A stretch of 32,628 nt of DNA from Octopus sinensis (lineage: Eukaryota): NCBI RefSeq assembly GCF_006345805.1, contig NW_021832766.1, positions 1 to 32,628 of the forward strand, read 5' to 3'. Shown one piece after another: positions 5,638 through 20,090 of the stretch. The position numbers and the translations under genes are program-made. How positions within the stretch are numbered: the first letter of the stretch is position 1; every line of letters begins with the position of its first letter. The notes under the pieces were generated by a model that saw only the letters and a list, made by a program, of their open reading frames with translations, made no database searches and had not been told where the DNA came from.

Positions 5638-5782
5638 TATTTCCTTATTGCCCACAAGGGGCTAAACATAGAGGGGACAAAGACAGACAAACGGATTAAG
5701 TCGATTACATCGACCCCAGTGCGTAACTGGTACTTAATTTATCGACCCCGAAAGGATGAAAAGCAAAGTCGACCTCGGCGGA
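5638..5782 (-). mobile_element. Major octopus tRNA-SINE (Meta/MESC-like core), 5'-truncated, tail type A
   Basis: CCCACAAGGGGCTAAACATAGAGGGGAC tail plus ATCGACCCCGAAAGGATGAAA-GCAAAGTCGACCTCGGCGG body, shared with many copies in the window. Confidence 0.85.
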
Positions 5783-6753
5783 TAAATTGGAAATGTGTAT
5801 CATATATGATGCATGGGCTCCAGGGAAATATATCCTGTATATCACGTGATATGTAAGAGAGAGAAAGGGTCAGCTTACGTCCCATTAGTTTCTTCTTCAA
5901 ATCCCACAGGCATCAGTTTTTACTTTCTATTTTTCTGGTGCAAAATAAATACCAATTAAATACCAATTTGACCATACTGTGGTCGTTTGGTCAAATTGTT
6001 ATTCACCGATATCCTTCTGTTAAACTTTATGGCTCTGTACCAATGCTAAAAAAGCGTCAATATTATTTCTCTTAGATCAATACCACCTCTGCAATTTCTG
6101 TCTAACAACCTACTTTAGTTCATAACTATCATGTAGAAATATTTTTATTTGTCAAGCACTTTAATAATAAATAAATATATGAACATTTTATGAGCATCTT
6201 ATGTCTGCAAGAAGGAAATGTTTTTCTTTATTTCTTATCACGTAAGAATATTCTTTAATCTTGGTTCTTTTTCTAGCGTAAACACATTTTCTATAAAATA
6301 TTCATATAATTGTTTAAAACATTATTTCTATATAGTTGTGGCTTATATGAAAATTGGAAACAAATGTTTAGATATCTTAAGCTTTAAGGGGCTTTCATAA
6401 GGGCTGATAAATAACTACGGTGTTTAAAAATTATTACAAAACAAAAAACTATAACTCCCAATTTTTGGGTGTGCCTTGAGAGTCATTAAATTCACAATTC
6501 TGTTTTTGTTTCCGAAACGTTTGTCTTTTGAGATAGTGTAAAGGTTGTAATAGAAGTATAGTCTTAGAAGAGAATGTCTTTGAAAACTATATCCTTTGTT
6601 TTATCCTTTATTCTTTGTTTTGTAGAACGAAACCAAAGACTTTACTTTACCGACCTCGGCAAGATTTGAACTCAGAACATAAAAACATATCGCAGGGTAT
6701 TTTCTCCGACCTGTAACGATTCTACTGATCCGTTACCTAAACTTAACAATATT

Positions 6754-7198
6754 CTTTTCTACTCAAGGTACAAGGCCCGAAATTTTGGGGGAGGGATCCA
6801 GTCGATTAGATCGACCCCAGTGTGCAACTGGTACTTAATTTATCGACCCCGAAAGGATGAAAGGCAAAGTCGACCTTGGCGGAATTTGAACTCAGAACGA
6901 CAGACGAAATACCTATTTCTTTACTACCCACAAGGACAAACAAGGACAGACAAACGGTTTAAGTCGAGCGTAACTGGTACTTAATCTATCGATCCCGAAA
7001 GGATGAAAGACAAAGTCGACCACAGCGGAATTTGAACTCAGAACATAACGGCAGACGAAATGCCTGTTTCTTTACTACCCACAAGGGGCTAAACACAGAG
7101 AGGACAAACAATGACAGACAAACGGATTAAGTCGATTAGATGAAATACCGATAAGCATTTCGCACGAGGTGCTAACGTTTCTGCCAGCTCGCCGGCTT
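6754..7198 (-). mobile_element. Head-to-tail trimer of the major SINE, flanked by a 17-bp TSD
   Basis: Three partial units with junctions at 6912|6913 and 7063|7064. TSD CTAAAC(T/A)TAACAATATT at 6737-6753 and 7199-7215 (one mismatch). Confidence 0.85.
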
Positions 7199-7821
7199 CT
7201 AAACATAACAATATTGAATTCATTTTGTGTCTGCTTTTCCATACCTGCTTTTGTTATTGTCGTTGTTATTGTGTAGCCACCGGCTAGCCTTGATTGAGCA
7301 GACCTATGATCAAAGATATGTCAGTCGTCACAGCAACGTCTTTTTCACCCGAAGACAGATTCCAGAACTACCGTGTTCAACTTTTTGATTTTTTAAAGAG
7401 GTGGAGTGTAATCGGAGGGCAATTTTACTGCTATTTCTAGCAGCTGAAGCTCCCACGTATAGACTCCTTCTTTGGCTCCTACCATATCAACCATTCCCAC
7501 TACCGCACGTCGTTTCCACTGTATTAACCAGTCAGTTAACACTTCGTTTATGAAATTGTCAGCCAAGTGAAAAGGACGAGTCTTACAGATCATTGTAATC
7601 AGAACGTATTAATTAAGTCCTCGATTTAGAATGCTGCAAATTATCGATAAATAAATCAATGTGAGAAAACTAATTAGCTTAGTTATCATTCATTTCATTA
7701 ATATGTAAATTTCTTTCCGAGAATAGCCATGATAAATATTCTATAGGAAAACCTTTGATATCAAATATAATTACTTCTAATGCTAACCTGAACTTTAAAA
7801 TCAATTCTTAGAATATTCAGT

Positions 7822-7822
<1 letters not shown>

Positions 7823-7905
<83 letters not shown>

Positions 7906-8200
7906 AAACACAAACACACAACACACGCATACAAACATACACACGCACATAAAATACACACGCATCCATCTATCTATCTATCCATCCTTACATGTATAGT
8001 TTCATACATACATATATACATACGCACACATAGATATACACACATACATACACACATACATACATACATACATACATACATACATACATACATACACACA
8101 TACACACATGCATACATACATACATACATACATACATACACACACACATACATACATACATACATACATACATACATACATACATACATACATACTATAT
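7823..8200. repeat. (CA)n followed by (TACA)n microsatellites
   Basis: Direct inspection. Confidence 0.95.
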
Positions 8201-8551
8201 ACTTATGTACATACGCGCATATATGCATACATACATGTGCATGTACACACATGGATGCATGCAGCAAGCATTTAAACATGCTTACTTATGTACATACATA
8301 CGTGGATGCAGACAGCATACATATAAACATGCTTAGATACAATGGATCTCCGTCGGTTTCGAGGATAAGCGTTCAGTTGCTCACTCAACTGAACTACTTA
8401 CACAATAAATTAGAGGCCATGTGACATGGCCTGGTCTTGGAATTACAAATACGGTGTGTATGTACGTGTATGTGTGTGTGTGTGTGTGTGTGCGTGTGCA
8501 TGGTATGTATGTATGTGAAATAAGTTCAGGATTTTGTTGTGTATTTCATTC

Positions 8552-9290
8552 ATATTTCTTTACTACCCGCAAGGGGCTACACACAGAGGGGACAAACAAG
8601 GACAGACAAACAGATTAAGCCGATTACATCGGCCCCAGTGCGTAACTGGTACTTGATTTATGGACCCCGAAACGTGCTAACGTTTCTTATTTCTTTATTG
8701 CTCACAAGAGGCTAAACATAGAGGGGACAAACAAGGACAGGCAAACGGATTAAATCGATTACATCGACTCCAGTGCGTATCTGGTACTTAATTTATTGAC
8801 CCCGAAAGGATGACAGGCAATGTCGACCTCGGCGGAATTTGAACTCAGAACGTAAAAACAGACGAAATACCTATTTCTTTACTACCCACAAGGGGCTACA
8901 CAGAGGGGACAAACAAGGACAGACAAACAGATTAAGTCGATTATATCGAATCAGTGCGTAACTGGTACTTAATTTATCGACCCCGAAAGGATGAAAGGCA
9001 AAGTCAACCGCGGGGAAATTTGAACTCAGAACGTAACAGCAGACGAAATACCTATTTCTATTTCTTTACTACCCACAAGGGGCAAAACACAGAGAGGACA
9101 AACAAGGACAGACAAAGGGATTAAGTCGATTATATCGACCCCAGTGCGTAACTGGTACTTATTTAATCGACCTCGAAAGGATGAAAGGCAAAGTCGACCT
9201 CGGCGGAATTTGAACTCACAACGTAACAGCAGAAGAAATACGGCTACGCATTTCGCCCGGCGTGCTAACGTTTCTGCCAGCTCGCCGCCT
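8552..9290 (-). mobile_element. Head-to-tail tetramer of the major SINE, flanked by an 18-19-bp TSD
   Basis: Four units; only the rightmost keeps the full tRNA head (AGGCGGCGAGCTGGCAGAAACG, B box GAGTTCAAATTCC). TSD TTTGTTGTGTATTTCATTC at 8533-8551 and 9290-9308. Confidence 0.9.
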
Positions 9291-9790
9291 TTGTTGTGTA
9301 TTTCATTCTGACAGGACAGTTTGTCTATAAAGTCAGTTTATTAGAATGTAAGGTAAACATCTTTGTTTCCTTTGTAGAGGGGAATCAAATCTTATCCAGA
9401 AAATCTTTATTCACACATACTCTAGGGATCATATAACCTAATACATTCTTCTTCCTTCGTTTAATGAACGTTGCCTGTGATATGAAAGAAATTTAGCTGC
9501 TATATCTAGCCGCCATTTTTTTTGTGTCTGTGCAGGCATAAAACATCCAATACTCATATTGTTCCATGCGTCTTTCCTTTTACAATGGTCAGATGTATGT
9601 GATGTGAGGGAGATATAGTTGCTATTTTATAGTATAAAGAATGAAGTGATATTCTGTGTACTGTCTTCTATGGTGTGTTAAATGATTTTTTCTATTTTCC
9701 TGCCTTCTCTCACACATACAAATGTTTTTTCAAGTAAGCTGGTGAGAATATTTGATCCGTAAAATACTAATTTGTCAGATAAATTCGTTC

Positions 9791-10239
9791 GCTATTACTG
9801 AAAGAATTGCACAGAAATGGTTCTTACGCTTCATGGAGGAGAAATTCGAACTCACGGACACTTCGCATTCGTTTAGCATATTCACCGGCTCAATGAGGCA
9901 GTCCAGCTGAAACGACTCTTCCACCGACAAGACATGCGTCTTCAACATGACAAACACTTGCCTCCAGGTTCCGAAAATGCCATTTAGGTATTGGGTTGGA
10001 TAGTTGTACTGCATCCACCGTATTCTGCTGATATAATCGCCTTCAGATTATCCTCCCGCAGTCTAGGAGGTGTTTCACTCAACAACGATGAAGTGTTGAA
10101 GACGTGGCTCGATGAATTCTTCATCGAGCCACGTGATACCTATCGAAGACCCGGTGACACCTTTCATCAAAGCATTGACAGCTTAGCGGAACATTAGCAA
10201 GAATACGGAAGTAATGAAGGAGAATATATTATTGACTGA
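9791..10239 (+). mobile_element. Mariner transposase remnant, internally deleted and frameshifted
   Basis: AITERIAQKWFLRF (helix-turn-helix region) is joined to HRLNEAVQLKR...LQHD, then LGWIVVLHPPYSADI (degenerate YSPDL motif), LKTWLDEFF and EGEYIID*. Confidence 0.85.
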
Positions 10240-11449
10240 TTTCTTAAAATTGTTGATGAAAAGATAAGGATTAAAATAAATGAAAAAAAAAAAAATATTA
10301 CGAACGATTACATCTGTCTTGAAACAAAAATCGTATTGTTTTGGAAGACTAATATTTTCCTGATAATAAAAATCACACTCAAATTGCTATCATTCACTTG
10401 TATTTTTTAAAATTTCTTCCCGTATTTCCTCAGGCATATGAAAATCATTTCGCTACACATCAATAACTGTTCACTGATTTCAGTCGCTTCGAGTGAATTT
10501 TCAAGCGATCGATTATTATGTGATGGTCTGTTATTTATTTACTTAATTACTTGTTGACCTATTTTCTCTTTTTATTGGTCTTATATTCGTGGTCAAGTCA
10601 GAACAGAAAAATTTATATTTTTGCAGATCAAAGTTGTGAGCAGAGTGGTTAAGGTGCCTTCTTACTCCCTTTTTCAAATCGGTCGGTATCTCTATGAACA
10701 CACACACACACACACACATACACACAGGCGCGCTCACGCACACATGTACACCCATGAACGGGGAAAAGACGCTTCTAAAATTGTATGCGATATGAATGTC
10801 AGAATAGTGTTCAGGCTACTCCAGACTCTTAAAAGCCAACATCTTAATCAGGTTAAAACAGTTCCTCGGAAGGAGTTGGCTATAAGAAATATGTAACTCG
10901 AGTGTATCATAAAGAAACAAAAGATGGAGAAGCACTCATATATAACATTAAATTATTTACAAAAAACGTTATATAAAAAAAACAGATAAAATATATGGTG
11001 AAGAATTTTCGAAACAGCTGTAAAGAAATATCGAGAGCTGTATTTTTCCCTCACTGATTATATTTATATTTACGTTTATGTAACATCCTCTACATATGTT
11101 ACATCTATGTTTTTACATGTTTATACATGTTTAGCAAGATTCTTGATGTAGACACCTGTGTTGAAACAAATATTATTATATTTGTGGATGGTCATTTTTT
11201 TCCAGTAAACACACGTACTGTTTATTTGATCTTCACTTTAGCATTATCATTATTATTAGTTTATTTGTCAGAGTTCTTTCATCACACAATCTGAGACCTC
11301 TTCAATGAAAATGACTCTCCCCAGACACAACAAAATATGCTTCAACACACGAACCCACATAAAGAATCTTGTAAACCAAATCCAAAAATGAAATATAATT
11401 ATCAATTGTTTATAATACGTCCACCGTAATGTAGTTTTACATTACTTTT

Positions 11450-11490
<41 letters not shown>

Positions 11491-11697
11491 TCCTTCTAGA
11501 TTAGACGTATTTAGTATGTCGCAGAAATTTAAGCGCCAATTGTGCGAGCGTTTTGTGAGGTCATTTCATTGGTGACTATTTTAGCCAATGGCAATGTACC
11601 ATGCTGGTGTCTGGTTTGAAACAGCAACTGATCAATAAGTGTTTTGTCAATCTAACAACGTCACTATGTTTACAACTTATACAGAGATTGTGCGTGC

Positions 11698-11730
<33 letters not shown>

Positions 11731-11769
11731 TGTGTGTGTGTGTGTGCGTGTGTGTGTGCAAAGAAATAC

Positions 11770-11999
11770 CTATTTCTTTACTACCCACAAGGGGCTAAAC
11801 ATAGAGGGGACAAACAAGGATAGACAAAGGGTTTAAGTCGATTACATCGACCCCAGTGCGTAACTGGTTCTTAATTTATCGACCCCGAAAGGATGAAAGG
11901 CAAAGTCAACCTCGGCGGAATTTGAACTCAGAATGTAACGGCAGACGAAATACGGCTACGCATTTCGCCCGGCGTGCTAACGTTTCTGCCAGCTCGCCG
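11770..11999 (-). mobile_element. Major SINE, near full-length monomer, tail type A
   Basis: Head, body and tail all present. Its 3' end abuts AAAGAAATAC, the same junction sequence seen in the multimers. Confidence 0.9.
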
Positions 12000-12978
12000 A
12001 ATCGGTTGGGCTGGTGCTTATCTTTATTACTAATATAGATAATTGCATAATAATAAAACCTCAGCTGAATATAACGACAATCTGTTACTGGTTAATTTTC
12101 TTTCCCACAGAGGATTTGAACTCAGCACTGTAAGTTACCAATTCACTTGTCAAGGACATAGAAAGTTATATCGCCAAACTGCACCTACGTAGAGCTAGAT
12201 GTACTAGGTGATAGATTGTTAAGGATCTTGTCCAAGAGTGTAATTCTGTAACGGAGACAGGATCCGAAATGCCGCCGAAATTTCTTCTTCTTGTCAAGCG
12301 GTATATCGATTTCCTTGTTTGCAATCTCCGAGAAGACAGAAACTAAATGAAAACTAAAGCTGAGTGTAGCTTTTACACATTTTCCCATCCGTAAGTCTTT
12401 TGTTTGCTTAACAGAATTATATTCTCAGCCTACTTGATATCGCTAACGCTTTTCTTGGAAATTGGTATGGAATATGTTTATGAATCTAAAATTAGGGATT
12501 ATAAAGTTGTTACGTAGACAGTATTCCGGCAACGCAAGTGAAATGGAAATTTATGAAGAACAAATCCCTACCAAACAAAGAGATTGAAACGTACTAAATG
12601 TATATAAAGAAATACGGCGATATCAAAGCCATCGGCTAATTGAAAGCAAATGGAATGCAAACAACGGCTGCAAACAGACAGAAAACAATGGCTGAAGACA
12701 GTAAGAATAGCAACGGAAGTAACAAGCTGATAGGGGAGCCTCTACGTGGTTTTAGATTTGCTAGAAAAATAGCTAAATCTCTCTCTAAACACACTAGCTT
12801 TTAAATAAGCAATAAAAATATATAAATAGAATAAAATAGAGAGAGAGAGAGAGTGTACATTGGGTAATGTAAATCAAGATACGTAACATAGTGTATGAAG
12901 AAAGAGATCATACAGTTATGGTTAGATATCAGTGTTGTTATAGGCCTGCTCGATCAATAAAACAACAGCAACAAAAGT

Positions 12979-13368
12979 GGAGGCGCAATGGCCCAGTGGT
13001 TAGGGCAGCGGATTCGCGGTCGGAGGATCGCGGTTTCGATTCCCAGACTGGGCGTTGTGTGTGTTTATTGAGCGAAAAGAACCTAAAGCTCCACGAGGCT
13101 CCGGCGGGGAGGGGTGGGTGGGAGGGCGACCCCTGTTGTACTCTTTCGCCCCAACTTTCTCTTACTCTTTCTTCCTGTTTCTTGTCCTCGGCTTCCTACG
13201 CAACTGCTGAGCCTGGATGCGCATTCATCCATCCGTCGATGCTCTCGGTGTCGGGAGTTTACCTGCTTTCTCTTCTGCGGGTCTTACGAATAGCAAAGGA
13301 CCATGTTTCGGACTTCTCCCACTACAGAGGCGCGATCTTACGAGCTCTGGGACGGAGACCGTTCGCTC
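12979..13368 (+). mobile_element. tRNA-Arg-headed SINE (OR-like) with an alternative 3' half
   Basis: Head GGAGGCGCAATGGCCCAGTGGTTAGGGCAGCGG...GGTTTCGATTCCC matches the 30220-30704 copy to about 13160, then diverges entirely. Flanked by CAA/CAG-rich sequence. Confidence 0.85.
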
Positions 13369-13462
13369 AACAGCAACAGCATCAATAGCAACAGCAACAA
13401 CAATAATTATAACGGCGACAACGACGATGACGACGACGACGATGATGATGATGATGATGATT
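13369..13462. repeat. (CAA/CAG)n to (GAC/GAT)n triplet tract
   Basis: Direct inspection. Confidence 0.85.
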
Positions 13463-13737
13463 ACTTTATTTGCCACGGAAGCTTATGTAGACAAATAAAA
13501 GAAATGATAAAACACGCATCACAAAAGCAAGCGAAATGGGCGGAAAGCAAAGTTCATATAAAACATTAAATATTTAAAACAAGAGTAACTGAAACAAACA
13601 AACAAACGAACAAACAAAAATCCCCTGAAAAACAAATGAGCGACCCACGGAGACACTGGTGAACAACTTTGTGTTGCGAGCAATTTTGTGGTCAAATAGT
13701 CAAGAAAATGACCACTTCTTGGTAACGATTTATGTTA

Positions 13738-13965
13738 TTTCCAAATTTTGGTACAGGCCAGCACTTTTGAGGGAGGGCATAAGTTAATTAAATCGACCCT
13801 ACTGCTCAACTAGTATTTATATTATCGACCACGTAAGGATGGAAAGCAAAGTCAACTTGGTTGGCCCGAGGTTATAGTAGAAGATACTTGCCCAAGTTCC
13901 ACACAGTAGGAATGAACCCGGAACCATGTGGTTGGTAAGCAAGCTACTTACCACACAGCCACTCC
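13738..13965 (-). mobile_element. Chimeric SINE: head of the 26946-27369 family fused to body and tail of the major SINE
   Basis: 13862-13965 matches 27265-27369. 13738-13858 matches the TCGACC...AAGGATG-AAAGCAAAGTC body and type-B tail. Confidence 0.75.
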
Positions 13966-14410
13966 TTTTTAGTTACTCTATCTTAAATACGTTTCATTAG
14001 CAATTATCACTTACAGTTATATAATCAACATTTATTGTCTACAAGTGTGTTTAAATATGTTTATATATATATATACGTATATGTATGCATACATCTATCA
14101 ATCAATCTATCTATCTACCTATCTAAGAGACAACGAGAGGTAAGGCGACTTACTCATGTGTTCATTTTCGAACTGTCTGAGGTGACCTTGGTTTTTTTGT
14201 AGGTTTTTCTTTCCAAGGCTACACCTAAACTGTGAACTTTATATATATATATTACTTTTTTATACATCACAGAACCCACAGATCCCTATTGATCGAACGT
14301 TTTTTCTTTGTGTGTCCCACCCATCCCACCTCGAAAAGAAAAAAACTCTACATTGTATTTCGTCCATTTTTATTCTGTGTTTAGCCCTGTGTTGCCATAA
14401 TAAAAAGTTA

Positions 14411-14414
14411 TCTG

Positions 14415-14495
<81 letters not shown>
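14411..14495. repeat. (TATC)n microsatellite
   Basis: Direct inspection. Confidence 0.95.
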
Positions 14496-15035
14496 GTCTG
14501 TCGGTCTGTCTTTCTGTCCTGTCTGTCTATAAGTATGTGTGGTGTTTAAGTATATGTATACCTATGTATATAAGCTTATCTTCCTCTCTTTTTCTTCACC
14601 CCCACCACCGCGTCTGCGTGCGTGTGTGTGTGTGTGTGTGCGTCAGTGTGTCTGTGTATGCGGATTGTATTTGTGTGTATACTTATATATTATTAGTGAA
14701 CGTTTATGTTTGCTCAGATAAATATATCTATGATACCCACTGGAACAGAAAACAGGCGCTCGTTGCCAAGTTTTAACGCAAGTTTTTAACGCACATCAAA
14801 GGAAAATAACAGATAAAGAAAACAAACAAAAAACAAAACAATAAAACAGCCAGATAGAAAATGACCACAACTACTTCAGAGATTGTCTGATAGCATTCTT
14901 TCTCCTGTCTGTGCTACGATAAATTCCTCTCCACTATCTGACATCCGCATCATATTCCTTCACTAGCGCTTTCGGTGCAGTCGCGAGCCATATCCGCGAT
15001 GGGAAATATTGTCATATTTTCAATCTAGTAATGTT

Positions 15036-15130
15036 AGAGCCATTTCGTCCGTCTTTACGTTCTGAGTTCAAATTCTGCCGAGGTCAGCTTTGCCTTTCAT
15101 CCTTGGGGGTCGAGAAAACAAGTCCCATTT
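15036..15130 (+). mobile_element. Major SINE fragment (B box plus core), plus orientation
   Basis: CATTTCGTCCGTCTTTACGTTCTGAGTTCAAATTCTGCCGAGGTCAGCTTTGCCTTTCATCCTTGGGGGTCGA. Confidence 0.8.
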
Positions 15131-15201
15131 AAAGATTTGGATCAATGTAATCCACTTCCGAAATTGTTCGGCCTCTACCAACGTTTCAAACCAATATTAT
15201 A

Positions 15202-15767
15202 TTGGGTTGTGCAGAAAGTTCGTGTCAATTTTTAAAGGAAAGAAAAAGGTCAATAAATACTTGCCATTAAATTTTTAATCAACCAAATATGAATCATTTT
15301 GTTGCACAATTCGTCTCCATCTTTCCTTTAACTTGAAAATACCCTCTTCCCAGAACTGAAGTGGTTTCATGGCATAGAATTCATCAAGGTATCTTTTTAC
15401 ATTATCCAAGGAATTGAAATTTTTACCATTAAGACTATTCTGCAGAGACCTGAATAAGTGGAAATCCGAAGGAGCAATATCTGGTGAATATGGAGGGTAG
15501 GGTAACACATCCCAGCCGAGCTGCAGCAATTTTTGTCTGGTTCCCAAAGAATCAAGTGCCGAAATTGAACTTTCTTATCTTCCATTTTAAAGGGTTACAG
15601 AATTAACACAGGTTATAGGAACATAAACCTTCTTCCACGAAAATAAGGCTTAAACTGTGCTCTAAATGGAGGTGTAGTCAAATCCTATTTTATGGACTGA
15701 ACCATGTTCTAAGATAAGTCGAAAGGTAAGCTACTATAAATCGGCACGAACTTTCCGGACCGCCCAA
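15202..15767 (-). mobile_element. Non-autonomous mariner deletion derivative with both TIRs and TA TSD
   Basis: Left TA|TTGGGTTGTGCAGAAAGTTCGTGTCAATTT and right AAATCGGCACGAACTTTCCGGACCGCCCAA|TA are ~30-bp imperfect inverted repeats. It encloses a transposase C-terminus. Confidence 0.92.
15275..15547 (-). pseudogene. Mariner (D,D34D-type) transposase C-terminal fragment
   Basis: TRQKLLQLGWDVLPYPPYSPDIAPSDFHLFRSLQNSLNGKNF...WEEGIFKLKERWRRIVQQNDSYLVD*, containing the YSPD(L/I)APSD signature. Confidence 0.93.
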
Positions 15768-15884
15768 TACATAGTAATGACACGTCTCTGACGATTTTAA
15801 ATGATGATTGTAGAATTCGCATTATGCAACAATTTATCACCATATGTTAATGAAACGTAGGGAAGATGGCGTAACTAAATATAA

Positions 15885-16100
15885 TGGCTTCAAATTTTTC
15901 CACAAGGGCAGTAATTTTGGTGGAGGGGATGAGTCGATTACGTGGCTCCCAGTGCTCAACTGGTGCTTATCCTATCGACCCCAAAAGGATGAAATCAAAA
16001 TCGACCTCGACGGAATTTGAACTCAGAATGTCTTTAAGACTGACGAAATGCCGCTAAGCATTTTTCCCGGCGCGCTAATGATTCTGTCAGCTCGCCACCT
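15885..16100 (-). mobile_element. Major SINE, diverged full-length monomer, tail type B
   Basis: Head ...GTCAGCTCGCCACCT, body GACCCCAAAAGGATGAAA, tail CAAATTTTTCCACAAGGGCAGTAATTTTGG. Confidence 0.8.
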
Positions 16101-16299
16101 TGGTGTAACTAAATATAAAATAAACAATCTGTCATGTTTTGTCAATATTTGGACAATCCCAAATATATATCATTATTATTTCCGCAAGTCCCGTCGTTCC
16201 CTCTTATCCATGAAACTGTATGTAGCCTACTACGATCCTTCCCATAGAGCAAATTAGCAGACCCTGCTGAACACACATACATACGTACCTCCCTCCTTT

Positions 16300-16500
16300 C
16301 CCCTCTCTCCCTATCATGATAGATCGTTAGCCACTACACACATTTTTTTCTCTCCTTGTTTTTTCTGTGTCCCTTTCTGTAGAAGAGCGTAGGCTCGAAA
16401 CGTAAAAGACTTTTTCTATTCCTGAGCGTTATACTAATACATCTGTTTGTTTTGTACACCACCTGTCTTCGTCTTTTGTTTGTTTCGTAAACTCTCCCTA
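16300..16500 (+). repeat. Probable Penelope-derived small repeat ending in (TA)n, with a hammerhead-like motif at 16373-16408
   Basis: CTTT-CTGTAGAA-GAGC gtag GCTC-GAAA-CG-TA-AAAG followed by a pyrimidine-rich tail ending ACTCTCCC(TA)n. The Penelope link is inferred from the motif only. Confidence 0.45.
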
Positions 16501-16508
16501 TATATATA

Positions 16509-16713
16509 CAGGGTAGCCCAAAAGTAGATTTACAGTTATTGAATTTCCCTTTCGCATTAACAGTTTAGATCTTAATTATATAAAAAAATATGAAACCATT
16601 ATTCTATACTAATTTAGTTAAATGTAAGATAAAAATTTATATATAATAAGATGTTTTAAAAAAAATTTAAAGTTCCTACTTGATAACTGTAAACCTACAT
16701 TTGGGCCACCCTG
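16509..16713. mobile_element. Tc1/mariner-type MITE (~205 bp)
   Basis: ~32-bp TIRs CAGGGT(A/G)GCCCAAA(A/T)GTAG(A/G)TTTACAGTTAT, TA on both sides, AT-rich non-coding interior. Confidence 0.9.
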
Positions 16714-16898
16714 TATGTATTCGTTTTACGTCTAGATCGCTTATATTCAACACATCCTCGCAGACTTTGATTTAGAGCAAGCCTCATGGGAATCTGTACA
16801 CATTATAAATCGGTTGAAAAATTCAGAAATGTGGTGTATTTACACAAAGAATCAGAAATCTTTGCTTTATATTTTTCCTGTATATTTATTTCACATAG

Positions 16899-16984
16899 AT
16901 GTTGATAATAACGCCATAGTCTTATTTGTTGTTGACCACTCTCGGGAAATAAATCACTTCATTGGAGGACTTAAAATTTTTATT
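16899..16984 (+). CDS. Candidate internal coding exon of an unidentified gene (phase 1 to phase 0): xVDNNAIVLFVVDHSREINHFIGGLKIFI
   Basis: Pyrimidine-rich acceptor TTTATTTCACATAG, canonical donor GTAAGT, open frame with protein-like composition, unique sequence. Confidence 0.6.
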
Positions 16985-17054
16985 GTAAGTTTCATGCACA
17001 TTTAAATAGCTCAGAAGCACTCAGACACCGATGTATGTATATATGTATGTATGC

Positions 17055-17058
<4 letters not shown>

Positions 17059-17132
<74 letters not shown>
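17059..17132. repeat. (TA)n microsatellite
   Basis: Direct inspection. Confidence 0.95.
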
Positions 17133-17148
<16 letters not shown>

Positions 17149-17989
17149 ATACATGTACACACACTTACACATACACACGTCCTTTTAGCTTTCTCTCACA
17201 CACAATTTTCGCTTTGTCTCTGTTTTAATTTCCTATTTCTTGTGGATATGATAGCTTACTAATATTAATGTTAGCTTCGTGCCAAGAAATAACGACGAAA
17301 AGTATTATTTTACGTATGAAAACTTTCATCGTGAAATCCATTCTATATAAAAAGTCTATCTACTTTTGGTGACAACTGTTTGGACGAACATTTGATAAAT
17401 CTTTCCAAAAGTCATGAAACCGAATAGCATTTAAGATGACAGAAAGAAATTCTACATTGGTAATGGAATATGTTAAAATCATTTTTCTTGCCTCAATAAA
17501 AATTGAAAATAAGCTGGCACTTATCTTCAGTTTGGTTAACTTTAATCGGATGAGAAATATATTCTGTTTAAATGGCTTTTTAGTTTCTAGCTTCAGTTTC
17601 TTATTCTCACTCACAGAAAGGATTCACATCGTCCAGAATTCGTAACTTAAGAAATAATTTACGTTTCTTTGCAGTCGATAAAAAAGAACACCCACGATCA
17701 TCTATTATTACAAAAATCTTTTATAGATTTCTCATTTACATCCCAAACCCAGTAGGATACTAAAAATACAGAAGATAGTTTATAGTAGAATATATTTTTT
17801 TATTGTGAAATTTGTTTTACTTTTTCGCGTCCTTCCAGCAGGTCGACTTCGTAGTAAAACGTATCTATCTGAAATTCGGTTGAGTTTGTAAATCGTAATA
17901 CGAAAATGATATCGTCATTTTCACCAATAATTCATGCTTCGCAATGAAAGCAAATAATCTAAAATGTATAAGCACTGAAGGTAGGGGCC

Positions 17990-18235
17990 GAAGGTGGCAG
18001 AATTATTAGATCCATAGAAAACGAAAGCAGGAAAAAAAGAAAACGTTTTGTGGTGTTTGGTTGCGTCCTTTTAGATTCTTTTTGGTTCAAATATCACCAA
18101 CGTCTACTTTGTTTTCCTTCCGGCATCGCTAAAATAAACTCGGAATCATTGGCCTCTAGCTTACCGTGCTCTTCCACAAAATGTGTGGTCCTGTTACATT
18201 TGGTATCATTATTAAGAGAAAGTATAAGTAAGTTA
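17990..18235 (+). mobile_element. Highly diverged major SINE copy
   Basis: GAAGGTGGCAGAATTATTAG head, GGTTCAAATATCACCAACGTCTACTTTG B box/body and a degenerate type-B tail. Confidence 0.55.
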
Positions 18236-18283
18236 AGTTCAAAATTTTTCATTGTTGTGGTTCATATCTTTCACACACACACA

Positions 18284-18343
<60 letters not shown>

Positions 18344-18492
18344 TAAAGCGGGCCTGTAGGAGAAAGGGCAGATCATTGAAGGAGTCGCGAATGGCGACGA
18401 AAAGTCTTTTACAAAACTAGCTGATTGATTAAATGAACGAACGAGTAATCAAACAACAAATTAATTAATTGTTTAAATGTTGACTAATGATA

Positions 18493-18998
18493 ATCCTTTC
18501 TATTATAGGGATAAGGTCTGAAATTCTTGGTGAGGGAAAAAATCGATTATATCGACCCCAGTGTTTCGAAAGGATGAACACAGAGAGGACAAACAAGGAT
18601 AGTCAAAGGGATTAAGTCGATTACATCGACCCCAGTGCATAACTGGTACTTATTTAATCGACCCCGAAAGGATGAAAGGCAAAGTTAACCTCGGCGCCCG
18701 AAAGGATGAAAGGCAAAGTCAACCTCGGCGGATTTGAACTCACAACGTAACGGCAGACGAAATACCTATTTCTTTATTACCCACAAGGGGCTAAATACAG
18801 AGAGGACAAACAAGGACAGACAAACGGATTAAGTCGATTACATCGACCCCAGTGCGTAACTGGTACGTATTTAATCGATCTCGAAAGGGTGAAAGGCAAA
18901 GTCGACATCGGTTGGAATTCGAACCCAGAACGTAACGGCAGACGAAATACCGCTAAGCATTTTACTCGGTTGGCTAATGATTCTACCAGCTCGCCGTC
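18493..18998 (-). mobile_element. Composite multimer of the major SINE with an internal 34-bp tandem duplication
   Basis: Type-B tail at the left end, type-A units inside, junction at 18765|18766. CCCGAAAGGATGAAAGGCAAAGT(T/C)AACCTCGGCG occurs twice at 18663-18730. Confidence 0.85.
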
Positions 18999-19004
18999 TT
19001 ATAT

Positions 19005-19005
<1 letters not shown>

Positions 19006-19065
<60 letters not shown>

Positions 19066-19097
19066 TAATAATGATAATAATAATAATAATAATAATG

Positions 19098-19157
<60 letters not shown>

Positions 19158-19171
19158 TAATAATAATAATA

Positions 19172-19240
<69 letters not shown>
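19006..19240. repeat. (AAT)n microsatellite
   Basis: Direct inspection; source of the poly-N/I/Y/L ORFs. Confidence 0.97.
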
Positions 19241-19865: not shown

Positions 19866-20090
19866 GGTTTCAAATTTTGGCACAAGGCCAGTAATTTCGG
19901 GGGACGATGTAAGTCGATTACATCGAACCCCCCCCCCCCCAGTGTTCAAATAGTACTTATTTTATCGATACCGAAAGGATGAATGGCAAAGTCGACCTCG
20001 GCGGGATTAGAACTCTGAACGCAAAAACGGACAAAATGTCGCTAAGCGCTTTCCTCAGTGTGCTAAAAATTCTACCAAGCTCGCCGCCTT
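19866..20090 (-). mobile_element. Major SINE monomer, tail type B, internal poly-C expansion
   Basis: Body GAAAGGATGAATGGCAAAGTCGACCTCGGCGG, head ...AGCTCGCCGCCTT, C-run at 19928-19940. Confidence 0.8.

What the first reader, a model, noticed from the sequence alone, without database searches (positions are those of the whole stretch)
6754..18998. Self-concatenating SINE: the same head-tail junction six times at four loci
Seen: the junction GAAATAC|CTATTTC recurs at 6912, 7063 (variant GAAATGC|CTGTTTC), 8870, 9051, 11769 and 18765. On the element strand, the 3' tail (AAAGAAATAG) is joined at one fixed point between the A and B boxes (GTATTTCGTCTG), giving a ~180-bp headless unit; only the 5'-most unit keeps the Pol III head. 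The junction is itself a hairpin (GAAATA-GG-TATTTC), so tail and head segment are complementary. The arrays at 6754-7198 and 8552-9290 are each enclosed by one TSD. Inference, three competing models: (a) a processed SINE RNA closed by this stem is circularised and copied by rolling-circle reverse transcription, retrozyme-like but without a ribozyme; (b) the RT jumps templates or primes on existing copies at GAAATAC, so the SINE targets itself; (c) a multimeric master gene was amplified. I do not know of a published description for octopus but cannot check.
Basis: partly seen in the sequence, partly recalled or inferred. Interest (0 to 1): 0.75.

Follow-up and report, generated by a model that had tools for sequence, protein, structure and literature searches.

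The report
Octopus SINE that chains tail-to-head
An abundant octopus short retroposon (SINE) occurs both singly and as chains of about 183-bp headless units, always joined at one fixed point, and the chains are patchworks of different source copies, not rolling-circle copies of one RNA.

Summary
GAAATAC|CTATTTC occurs five times exactly and once as a variant in the window (chance 0.6). The exact 22-mer junction occurs 31,236 times in the 2.72-Gb genome, at thousands of dispersed loci.

About 28% of units are headless, and about half of all A1-type tails are followed by another unit. Breakpoints are not scattered: about 90% join the tail to position 46/47.

1. Units of one short array are no more alike than random copies, so rolling-circle copying and simple in-situ duplication are rejected. 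Only long arrays are homogenised.
2. The junction depends on tail type: A1 tails join at position 46/47, A2 tails at position 13, and B1 tails never join.
3. Unjoined copies carry a short prefix of the partner sequence, and it lies inside the target-site duplication (TSD).
4. Position 46 is the first base of the 3' arm of a covariation-supported head hairpin.

Whole arrays are TSD-flanked as often as monomers.

Best model (about 0.5): reverse-transcriptase template switching between SINE RNAs at the hairpin apex, guided by a short 3' extension, plus re-transcription of multimers and later unequal crossing-over. The closest known cases are SINE-derived satellites and SINE multimers. I rate it a new variant of a known kind.

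The parts
9059..9289 (-). Array 2, first unit: full monomer (consensus 1-229 plus 5' GG) with an h1-type head; 96% identical to the consensus
9230..9259 (-). Head hairpin (consensus 29-41 paired with 46-58, loop 42-45 TAGC). Headless units begin at the first base of its 3' arm
   Evidence: 91.6% of pair cells paired in 96 heads; closing pair 41-46 is U.G in 40, G-C in 38 and U-A in 7
9045..9058 (-). Junction tail|G|position 47, here with the tail hexamer duplicated (GAAATAGAAATAG|GTATTTC)
8872..9051 (-). Array 2, headless unit 2 (47-229)
8864..8877 (-). Canonical junction GAAATA-G-GTATTTC
8688..8870 (-). Array 2, headless unit 3 (47-229), A2-type tail (GAGCAATAAAGAAATA); a different subfamily from units 1 and 2
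8673..8687 (-). Second junction type: the A2 tail is joined to head position 13 (AGAAACGTTAGCACG), followed by a deletion to position 110
8553..8672 (-). Array 2, terminal partial unit (110-229)
8533..8551 (.). TSD of array 2, 3' side of the element (TTTGTTGTGTATTTCATTC)
9290..9308 (.). TSD of array 2, 5' side; 19/19 identical
7067..7198 (-). Array 1, first unit: h2-type head (1-57) joined to 153-227 by an internal deletion
7057..7070 (-). Junction variant (element strand GAAACAGGCATTTC)
6914..7061 (-). Array 1, headless unit 2 (49-229, with deletions)
6906..6919 (-). Canonical junction
6754..6912 (-). Array 1, terminal headless unit of the sister family B (47 to about 170, then a B-type tail ...GAGTAGAAAAGAATA)
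6737..6753 (.). TSD of array 1 (CTAAACTTAACAATATT)
7199..7215 (.). TSD of array 1 (CTAAACATAACAATATT); 16/17 identical
11771..11999 (-). Monomer (1-229), h1 head
11763..11770 (-). 8-nt 3' extension GGTATTTC after the tail, followed by TTTGC(AC)n flank. This is not a second unit
18767..18996 (-). Array 4, first unit (1-229), h2-like head; (AAT)n lies next to its 5' end
18759..18772 (-). Canonical junction
18572..18765 (-). Array 4, headless unit 2 (47 to about 207) with an internal repeat of about 34 bp
18500..18571 (-). Array 4, rearranged partial unit ending in a B-like tail

Best explanation
This is a very abundant SINE of about 229 nt with a B box. It has a structured head and a short LINE-type tail (...GGGTAGTAAAGAAATA). 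It exists as monomers and as chains in the order head-unit, then headless units (46/47-229), then a terminal unit.

Proposed mechanism:
1. The RNA that is reverse-transcribed carries a few bases beyond the tail. These bases are identical to an internal head segment: GGUAU(UU) matching positions 46-52 for A1 tails, and AGAAAC matching positions 13-18 for A2 tails.
2. This extension pairs with the nicked target during target-primed reverse transcription. (Shown: the extension bases lie inside the TSDs.)
3. When the reverse transcriptase (RT) has copied the 3' arm of the head hairpin and reaches its apex (position 46), the cDNA end ...GAAATACC is complementary to the 3' extension of any other A1-tailed SINE RNA. 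The RT can then continue on that RNA's tail instead of entering the head. (Inferred.)
4. Repeating this gives chains built from different source RNAs, all with the same joint, inserted in one event and flanked by one TSD.
5. B1-tailed RNAs have no such extension, so they can only be the first template, which becomes the 3'-most unit.
6. The units have no T4 run in the consensus, so Pol III transcripts starting at the first head could run through an array. That would let arrays re-transpose and would supply extension-bearing RNAs. (Inferred.)
7. A minority of arrays later expand in place by unequal crossing-over into satellite-like blocks.
For: Fixed joint:
- 70 of 92 sampled joints are exactly 229+G+47, and about 83 of 92 fall within 2 nt.
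- The exact 22-mer junction occurs 31,236 times.
- 28 of 100 GTATTTCGTCTG sites are preceded by the tail, and 56 of 100 A1 tails are followed by a unit.
- The first 100 exact junctions lie in 76 separate loci.

Chimeric units:
- Within-array identity is 0.858 against 0.852 between arrays (p=0.57).
- Concordance at diagnostic sites is 0.50 against 0.54 (permutation p=0.87).
- Upstream tail type and downstream unit type are independent across the junction (chi-square p=0.095, n=89).

Single-event insertion:
- TDSs above the shuffled-control threshold enclose 11 of 22 multimers and 22 of 41 monomers.
- This includes 5'-truncated arrays L025, L059 and L029.

Tail specificity:
- A1 tails join to position 46/47 in 56 of 100 cases and to position 13 in 1 of 100.
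- A2 tails join to position 13 in 20 of 100 and to 46/47 in 1 of 100.
- B1 tails join in 0 of 100.

Extension:
- Unjoined A1 flanks start GG/GGT/GGTA/GGTAT in 10 of 43 cases.
- Unjoined A2 flanks start AG/AGA/AGAA/AGAAA in 25 of 79.
- These bases lie inside the TSDs.

Hairpin apex:
- 13 base pairs, 91.6% paired against 36-52% in slid controls.
- The closing pair 41-46 changes on both sides between subfamilies.

Long arrays:
- In L029 unit identity is 0.94, with variants shared by subsets of units, some alternating.
Against: - No RNA data exist. The 3' extension and the switch at the hairpin apex are inferred from DNA only.
- Why the RT should leave the donor at position 46 is unexplained. Hairpin-promoted switching is established for retroviral RTs, not for LINE RTs.
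- A2 and B1 terminal units are rarer as headed monomers in the 305-kb sample than random RNA choice would predict, which hints at inherited composite lineages.
- Four of 15 A-B1 arrays have a first unit that is B1-like up to about position 62. Homing into a resident B1 copy explains this more directly.
- CpG-decay age tests were inconclusive.
- The samples are small: 100 listed places per pattern from one chromosome end, and 90 loci of 3 kb. Exact-word counts favour young copies.
Confidence: 0.5

Rival explanations
1. Homing into resident copies (DNA-level, stepwise). The RNA's 3' extension guides target-primed insertion into the same motif (GGTATTTC at 46-53) of SINE copies already in the genome. 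The resident head then anneals to the new cDNA, so the joint is seamless, and arrays grow one unit at a time inside the original TSD.
For: - Target choice does use pairing with the extension, over 2-10 nt inside TSDs. L083 shows a 10-nt match, AGAAACGTTA.
- Some A-B1 arrays have first units that are B1-like up to about position 62.
- In h1-headed arrays the first unit looks slightly younger than the downstream units: CpG retention 0.88 against about 0.78, not significant.
- Some nested head-after-fragment forms exist.
Against: - Unresolved nested forms number only 210 genome-wide, against 31,236 exact junctions.
- Ordinary insertions use only 2-5 nt of microhomology. With millions of such sites in 2.7 Gb, SINE-internal sites should take a few percent of insertions, not the roughly 50% of tails observed.
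- Position 46 at the joint is G in essentially all junctions, although about 29% of heads carry C46.
- Array L006 starts at position 150 of an upstream unit with no resident head before it.
- B1 and A2 headed monomers are not in large excess over B1- or A2-ended arrays.
Confidence: 0.2
2. Inheritance from multimeric master genes. One or two founding joints arose once, and multimers are transcribed from the first head and retroposed as units. Unit number changes only by out-of-register homologous template switching or unequal crossing-over, so no special joint-forming step is needed.
For: - The joint is invariant, including the extra G.
- Junction type correlates with tail subfamily.
- A2-tailed units are almost always headless (11 of 13 in the sample).
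- There is no T4 terminator inside the unit consensus (sequence), so read-through is plausible.
- 5'-truncated arrays with TSDs behave as single RNAs.
Against: - Units of one array belong to different subfamilies.
- All upstream-by-downstream combinations occur, with no significant association.
- First units next to B1 units are all different haplotypes.
- The young h1 head is found in front of A, A2 and B1 partners.
- This model therefore needs so much extra recombination that it merges into the best explanation.
Confidence: 0.17
3. Rolling-circle reverse transcription of a circular or end-paired unit RNA (retrozyme-like; the first reader's model a).
For: - An isolated unit RNA (47-229) folds with its 5' UAUUUC paired to its own tail.
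- One adjacent unit pair is 99% identical (L009).
- Long arrays are homogeneous (L029, 0.94).
Against: - Short arrays are heterogeneous at diagnostic sites.
- No self-cleaving ribozyme or any Rfam match was found in the SINE at E<=10.
- Terminal units are often another family, B1.
- Long-array variants are shared by subsets of units in alternating patterns, as in unequal crossing-over.
- The tail-48/53 pairing probability is 0.0000 in the full RNA.
Confidence: 0.03
4. Independent in-situ tandem duplications (replication slippage or unequal exchange) at each locus.
For: This explains the growth and homogenisation of long arrays. It is the explanation offered for TSD1-(SINE)n-TSD1 arrays in a bivalve (PMC11481361).
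Against: The same breakpoint, coinciding with the exact 3' end of the element, occurs at thousands of loci. Units within an array are heterogeneous.
Confidence: 0.05

Closest known systems
SINE-derived satellites (sSat) of squamate reptiles (Vassetzky et al. 2023, PMC10702118)
   Same: - Tandem units correspond to a defined part of a tRNA-related SINE, often the 3' part of the head with box B plus the body (for example the 179-nt sSat3Ati2).
- They occur at thousands of loci with the same unit boundaries.
- The terminal unit extends to the SINE end.
- Homogeneity rises with array length, and alternating subvariants occur.
   Different: - In the octopus every unit keeps the complete LINE-type tail, and the joint is the exact 3' end of the element fused to a hairpin apex.
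- Most octopus arrays are short (2-4 units), TSD-flanked and chimeric.
- The joint depends on tail type.
- No mechanism beyond unequal recombination or co-insertion was proposed for sSats.
Head-to-tail SINE multimers in mammals (Dip, B2, B1, Ves; PMC8466645) and fixed dimeric SINEs such as Alu
   Same: - A large fraction of copies sit in multimers: 49% of Dip, with up to 8 units.
- It is an open question whether they arise by insertion into tails or from dimeric templates.
- TATTT-type Pol III terminators occur next to tails.
   Different: - Those multimers consist of full-length units, each with its own head, joined through A-rich tails.
- In the octopus the internal units lack positions 1-45 and are joined at one internal nucleotide.
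- Unlike Alu, the unit number is variable and the partners are not fixed.
TSD1-(SINE)n-TSD1 arrays in the blood clam Scapharca broughtonii (Martelossi et al. 2024, PMC11481361)
   Same: A mollusc SINE. The first unit has a complete head, the internal units have truncated heads, and a single TSD surrounds the array.
   Different: There the internal units are truncated at both ends, as an internal segment duplication would give. The arrays are about 3% of copies and are attributed to unequal recombination. In the octopus the tails are complete and the joint is shared genome-wide.
Template jumping or switching by non-LTR RTs, and chimeric 'jigsaw' SINEs (PMC4758252, PMC4824008); hairpin-promoted copy choice and R-repeat strand transfer in retroviruses (my own knowledge)
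   Same: New combinations of modules arise when the RT moves from one RNA to another. A short terminal repeat or a hairpin fixes where the move happens.
   Different: Here the switch would be recurrent and site-specific, and it would add whole units of the same family. No experimental evidence exists for this RT.
Retrozymes and hammerhead-bearing tandem repeats of metazoans (my own knowledge)
   Same: Tandem units of about 170-400 bp from a non-autonomous retroelement, found in molluscs among others.
   Different: No ribozyme was found. The units are heterogeneous, a Pol III-type head is present, and TSDs surround whole arrays.

Membership tests
SINE (non-autonomous, LINE-mobilised, Pol III type 2 promoter) | Short (<1 kb), interspersed and present in very many copies | tested here: met
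   229-nt monomer. At least 129,669 exact GTATTTCGTCTG sites, dispersed across the genome.
SINE (non-autonomous, LINE-mobilised, Pol III type 2 promoter) | Variable-length target-site duplications | tested here: met
   TSDs of 11-23 bp were found for 22 of 41 monomers and 11 of 22 multimers, above the 95th percentile of shuffled controls.
SINE (non-autonomous, LINE-mobilised, Pol III type 2 promoter) | Head derived from tRNA, with A and B boxes | tested here: inconclusive
   A B-box-like GAGTTCAAATTCC lies at 71-83 (sequence). ARAGORN finds no tRNA, and the Rfam tRNA model gives no hit at E<=10. The A box is only loosely recognisable.
SINE (non-autonomous, LINE-mobilised, Pol III type 2 promoter) | 3' tail shared with a partner LINE | not tested
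   The partner LINE was not identified.
CORE-SINE superfamily (octopus OR1/OR2 are cited as members: PMC4824008, PMC4758252) | Conserved CORE domain of about 65 nt after the head | tested here: inconclusive
   Local alignment to a MIR consensus recalled from memory scored 27, against a shuffle mean of 26.1 +/- 4.7.
SINE-derived satellite / SINE multimer | Head-to-tail units that correspond to a defined SINE segment, with the same boundaries at many loci | tested here: met
SINE-derived satellite / SINE multimer | Homogenisation that increases with array length (concerted evolution) | tested here: met
   Short arrays 0.858, a 10-unit array 0.94, with variants shared by subsets of units. Only one long array was examined.
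Fixed dimeric SINE (Alu-like) | Constant number of units and constant, unit-specific partners | tested here: not met
   Arrays hold 2 to at least 10 units. Partner types assort independently.
Retrozyme / rolling-circle retroelement | Self-cleaving ribozyme in each unit | tested here: not met
   No ribozyme family was found in 6600-9400 at E<=10.
Retrozyme / rolling-circle retroelement | Units of one array copied from one template (near-identical at birth) | tested here: not met

The most novel reading that the evidence does not exclude
A SINE with a built-in, programmed strand-transfer signal. A 5-8-nt copy of an internal head motif sits at the RNA's 3' end. It guides both the choice of genomic target (RNA-guided target-primed reverse transcription) and a site-specific RT switch at the apex of a conserved head hairpin. 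It would work like the R repeats and strong-stop transfer of retroviruses, but in a non-LTR system. Through it the element concatenates RNAs from different source genes and seeds satellite DNA. The donor 5' ends might be made by cleavage in tRNA-like loops (positions 13 and 46 map to D-loop-like and anticodon-loop-like positions).
Probability: 0.25. Interest if true: 0.75.

Novelty: new variant of a known kind. Interest (0 to 1): 0.5.

Why it matters
SINEs make up roughly a tenth of octopus genomes (11.6% in O. vulgaris, PMC13282606). How interspersed repeats turn into tandem repeats remains largely a matter of inference (my own reading of the field).

This case offers an unusually clean system. 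There is one joint, at tens of thousands of sites. The joint depends on tail type. It sits at the apex of a structured hairpin and is foreshadowed by the 3' ends of single copies. That makes RT template switching and RNA-guided target choice by a non-LTR machinery directly testable.

It also has two practical consequences. It warns annotators that roughly 183-bp 'satellites' and 'SINE fragments' in octopus assemblies are one family. It also bears on copy-number and age estimates for octopus SINE bursts.

Tried and rejected
I used pattern counts with displayed flanks instead.
- My first tail-context pattern was too long. The second excluded the canonical junction through its last letter, so I re-ran it.
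- The Rfam scan gave only microsatellite-driven miRNA hits and nothing in the SINE. ARAGORN found nothing.
- The CORE-SINE assignment from a remembered MIR consensus was not significant, so I dropped it.
- CpG-decay and divergence age comparisons of first, middle and last units were inconclusive.
- Linkage between head type and body sites is low everywhere, so there is no specific recombination hot spot at 46/47.
- I withdrew an early impression that multimers have h2 heads while monomers have h1 heads. It came from the h1-anchored sample; genome-wide 71% of heads are h2.
- An early impression that B1 units lack heads of their own was also wrong. 58 of 100 B1-like units are headed.
- Literature: I found no description of this structure in octopus, and no paper contains the element's sequence words. 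Gilbert & Labuda 1999 and Albertin 2015 could not be opened. Dfam and Repbase cannot be consulted here.

Full report
**1. Check of the observation**

The motif GAAATACCTATTTC (+ strand) is exact at 6906, 8864, 9045, 11763 and 18759, and GAAATGCCTGTTTC is at 7057. That is 11 strand-matches at up to 2 mismatches against 0.6 expected, and no shuffle reached it.

Read on the - strand, each site is ...GGGTAGTAAAGAAATA-G-GTATTTCGTCTG.... A 229-nt consensus built from 67 full copies ends in GAAATA and has GTATTTC at position 47.

The window holds four loci of this family.

- Array 1, 6754-7198:
  - a head unit with an internal deletion;
  - one headless unit;
  - a terminal headless unit of a sister family with another tail.
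- Array 2, 8552-9290:
  - a full unit;
  - two headless units;
  - a 15-nt head fragment;
  - a partial unit.
- A monomer at 11771-11999.
- Array 4, 18500-18996.

Two corrections follow.

- The site at 11763 is a monomer whose 3' end continues for 8 nt as GGTATTTC and then enters TTTGC(AC)n. It is not a second unit.
- Array 2 contains a second kind of joint, tail to head position 13, at 8673-8690.

**2. Genome-wide census**

The window's assembly has 2,719,151,902 bases in 13,516 contigs. From memory this size matches a published chromosome-level Octopus assembly, but I did not verify the species.

| Sequence searched | Count |
|---|---|
| Exact junction 22-mer AAAGAAATAGGTATTTCGTCTG | 31,236 (reversed control 0) |
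| GTATTTCGTCTG sites, pyrimidine 14 nt upstream | 129,669 |
| A1 tails GTAGTAAAGAAATA | 75,422 |

- The first 100 junction places fall in 76 separate loci. Sixty-one loci hold one junction, 12 hold two, and one each holds three, five and seven. Spacing is 182-188 bp.
- Of the first 100 GTATTTCGTCTG sites, 49 are preceded by an h2-type head (GCTTAGCG), 20 by an h1-type head (GCGTAGCC), 28 by the tail and 3 by something else.
- Of the first 100 A1 tails, 56 run into a unit at position 46/47 and 1 into position 13. The other 43 run into flanking DNA.
- In the 305-kb sample (window plus 90 loci), 70 of 92 joints are exactly 229+G+47, and about 83 of 92 lie within 2 nt.

**3. Rolling circle and in-situ duplication fail for ordinary arrays**

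- In 20 short arrays (38 unit pairs), identity within an array is 0.858. Between arrays it is 0.852 (Mann-Whitney p=0.57).
- At seven subfamily-diagnostic sites, units of one array agree in 0.50 of comparisons. Random pairs agree in 0.54 (permutation mean 0.539 +/- 0.035).
- Units of one array visibly belong to different subfamilies. In array 2 of the window, unit 1 has 123T/126A, unit 2 has neither, and unit 3 has the A2 tail signature 198A/215A/217C/219A.
- The 3'-most unit is often a different family (B1).
- No ribozyme or other Rfam family matches the element at E<=10.
- Only one adjacent pair (L009) is 99% identical.
- The one long array examined, L029, has at least 10 units inside a 9-bp TSD. 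Its identity is 0.94, and many variants are shared by subsets of units, some in alternating patterns. That is the signature of unequal crossing-over after insertion.

**4. Arrays behave as single insertions**

- TSDs longer than the 95th percentile of shuffled controls enclose 11 of 22 multimers and 22 of 41 monomers.
- Arrays whose first unit is 5'-truncated inside the head also have TSDs around the whole array: L025 (16 bp), L059 (17 bp) and L029.

**5. The joint depends on the tail**

| Tail type | Genome count | Joined to 46/47 | Joined to 13 |
|---|---|---|---|
| A1, GTAGTAAAGAAATA | 75,422 | 56/100 | 1/100 |
| A2, GCAATAAAGAAATA | 22,378 | 1/100 | 20/100 |
| B1, AGAGTAGAAAAGAATA | 7,771 | 0/100 | 0/100 |

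B1-type units themselves are preceded by a head in 58 of 100 cases and by an A tail in 38 of 100.

**6. Single copies foreshadow the joint**

- The DNA right after an unjoined A1 tail begins GG, GGT, GGTA or GGTAT in 10 of 43 cases. I estimate the chance of GGTA at about 0.3%.
- After an unjoined A2 tail it begins AG, AGA, AGAA or AGAAA in 25 of 79 cases, with frequency falling as length rises.
- These bases are part of the TSD, so they were already in the target. Examples:
  - GGTAGTACAAATGTAC
  - GGTAAGTAGCTTGCTAA
  - GGTATACCCATACAC...
  - AGAAACGTTATTTCTGTTT...
  - AGAAATACAAGTAG
- The preferred first bases differ with tail type and match the respective joint partner.

The simplest reading is that the RNA carries a short extension beyond GAAATA that pairs with the nicked target. 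Such an extension is what transcripts of junction-bearing source genes would have. In mammals TATTT is reported to act as a Pol III terminator (PMC8466645), which would end an A1 transcript at ...GAAAUAGGUAUUU. That step is inference.

**7. The joint sits at a hairpin apex**

- The head folds into a 13-bp hairpin, 29-41 with 46-58, with loop 42-45 (TAGC).
- In 96 heads 91.6% of pair cells are standard pairs. With the 3' partner slid by 1-2 positions the figure is 36-52%.
- The closing pair 41-46 is U.G in 40 heads, G-C in 38 and U-A in 7. This is a change on both sides between the two main head subfamilies.
- Headless units begin at position 46, the first base of the 3' arm.
- In the full-length RNA the tail does not pair with 48-53 (probability 0.0000). 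Only an isolated unit RNA closes on itself.

**8. Masters, homing or switching**

- *Against a few fixed masters.* Upstream tail variant (219G or 219A) and downstream unit type (62T, 62C, B1-like) show no significant association in 89 junction loci (p=0.095). All combinations occur. First units next to B1 units all have different haplotypes. The young h1 head precedes A, A2 and B1 partners.
- *Against homing into resident copies as the main route.*
  - Unresolved nested forms (GGTATTTCG, up to 30 nt, then a new head) number only 210 genome-wide. Several of those are a different, head-only tandem repeat.
  - Ordinary insertions need only 2-5 nt of microhomology, so SINE-internal sites should take a few percent of insertions, not half.
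  - Position 46 at the joint is G in essentially every junction, although 29% of heads have C.
  - However, a seamless resolution through the resident head is mechanistically plausible. Four of 15 A-B1 arrays have first units that are B1-like up to about position 62. Homing therefore stays a serious rival.
- *For a discrete stop at the apex.* A few units or arrays start exactly at 44-47 with unrelated DNA upstream, about 3-4 in 200 listed sites before correcting for the filter. One such array at C1:10146617-10146998 has a TSD of about 9 bp, judged only from the coordinates. In L061 two copies are joined head-to-head at position about 50-53, as after a snap-back. These cases are few.

**9. Most likely mechanism**

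- *Shown:* a fixed, tail-specific joint; chimeric arrays; a single TSD; extension bases inside TSDs; the hairpin apex; secondary homogenisation.
- *Inferred:*
  - The RT starts on a SINE RNA of any tail type and copies the 3' arm of the head hairpin.
  - At the apex the cDNA end (...GAAATACC) pairs with the GGUAU(UU) extension of another A1-tailed RNA.
  - Synthesis continues on that RNA's tail.
  - The A2 extension (AGAAAC) pairs with cDNA that has reached position 13.
  - B1 RNAs have no extension and can only be the first template.
  - Re-zipping of the hairpin behind the RT is a plausible reason for release of the cDNA end, by analogy with hairpin-promoted copy choice of retroviral RTs (my own knowledge, untested here).
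  - Arrays are then re-transcribed from the first head. There is no T4 run inside the unit consensus.
  - That read-through supplies extension-bearing RNAs and makes the process self-reinforcing.
  - The founding joint may have been a rare nested insertion or an end-to-end jump.

My confidence in this model is about 0.5. The rivals are homing (0.2), master inheritance (0.17), in-situ duplication as the origin (0.05) and rolling circle (0.03).

**10. Comparison with known systems**

- The closest published cases are the SINE-derived satellites of squamates (PMC10702118). Next are the TSD1-(SINE)n-TSD1 arrays of a blood clam (PMC11481361) and the head-to-tail multimers of Dip, B2 and Ves (PMC8466645).
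- This case differs in four ways:
  - complete tails in every unit;
  - one internal acceptor nucleotide at a structured site;
  - tail-type specificity;
  - demonstrably chimeric arrays.
- It is not a fixed dimer like Alu and not a retrozyme.
- Octopus SINEs OR1, OR2 and OK were described in 1994. OR1 or OR2 is cited as a CORE-SINE (PMC4824008, PMC4758252). I could not obtain those sequences, and a test against a remembered MIR consensus was not significant. Superfamily membership is therefore left open.
- I found no description of this structure in octopus in the searchable library. Dfam and Repbase could not be checked.

**11. Caveats**

- Each list of 100 places comes from the start of one contig.
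- Exact-word patterns favour younger copies and are affected by CpG content. Raw k-mer ratios, such as 31,236 junctions against 17,966 h1 heads, must not be read as unit ratios.
- The locus sample is anchored on junctions, h1 heads or A1 tails.
- There are no RNA, population or cross-species data.

Noticed in passing
G000 C1:195358953-195359246, C1:194222255-194222353, C7:15322782-15323080, C4:103048075-103048271, C9:16123246-16123342 (coordinates): A second kind of SINE-derived tandem repeat. Head-only units of about 64-76 bp (GGCGGCGAG...GGTATTTCGTCTGCCG + AA) are repeated head-to-tail, at least 5 times at some loci.
   Followed up: no
L061:1522-1814: Two copies in opposite orientation, joined head-to-head at consensus position about 50-53. 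This palindromic arrangement is close to the hairpin apex and looks like snap-back or twin priming.
   Followed up: partly
window 7800-8340 and 8440-8520: Long (CA)n, (CATA)n and related microsatellites lie between the two arrays. They produce spurious sub-threshold Rfam hits to mir-297, mir-3149 and mir-466.
   Followed up: yes
loci (e.g. L048, L039, L049, L077, L089): Between the 5' TSD copy and CGGCGAG there is a leader of variable length that nests as gg, agg, aagg, taagg, ataagg, aataagg, caaataagg. The transposed RNA therefore starts at several points in a shared upstream sequence ...AAATAAGG, so the true 5' end of the element lies a few bases upstream of the head as I numbered it.
   Followed up: partly
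window 5638-5782, 13780-13856, 15042-15157, 15932-16096, 19910-20086: Further copies of the same SINE superfamily. One is a 5'-truncated A2-tailed copy. Four are older copies that share positions 1 to about 170 but end in other tails (for example ...GCCAAAATTTGAAACCAATA). Several tail families thus share one head and body.
   Followed up: partly
window 18999-19200 and beyond: A long (AAT)n microsatellite lies directly next to the 5' end of the SINE array at 18996. A (TA)n run sits at 11458-11486 and a (GT)n run at 11700-11758, the latter next to the 3' end of the monomer. Genome-wide, about half of unjoined A1 tails run into (TA)n.
   Followed up: no
L009:1330-1741 (same array as L008): The first two units of this array are 99% identical, while the third is 90% identical to them. 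This is the only sampled case compatible with a recent local duplication or a double copy of one template.
   Followed up: no
L006:2165-2825 and L074:133-901: Three full-length older-family copies, each with its own head, lie head-to-tail with short A/T-rich spacers. This suggests insertion into the tails or flanks of earlier copies, a different route to clustering from the fixed joint.
   Followed up: no
window 9045-9058; G000 C1:9985723-9985757; L006 junction: At three independent loci the tail hexamer is doubled at the joint (GAAATAGAAATAG|GTATTTC). This could be slippage or re-priming at the switch point.
   Followed up: no
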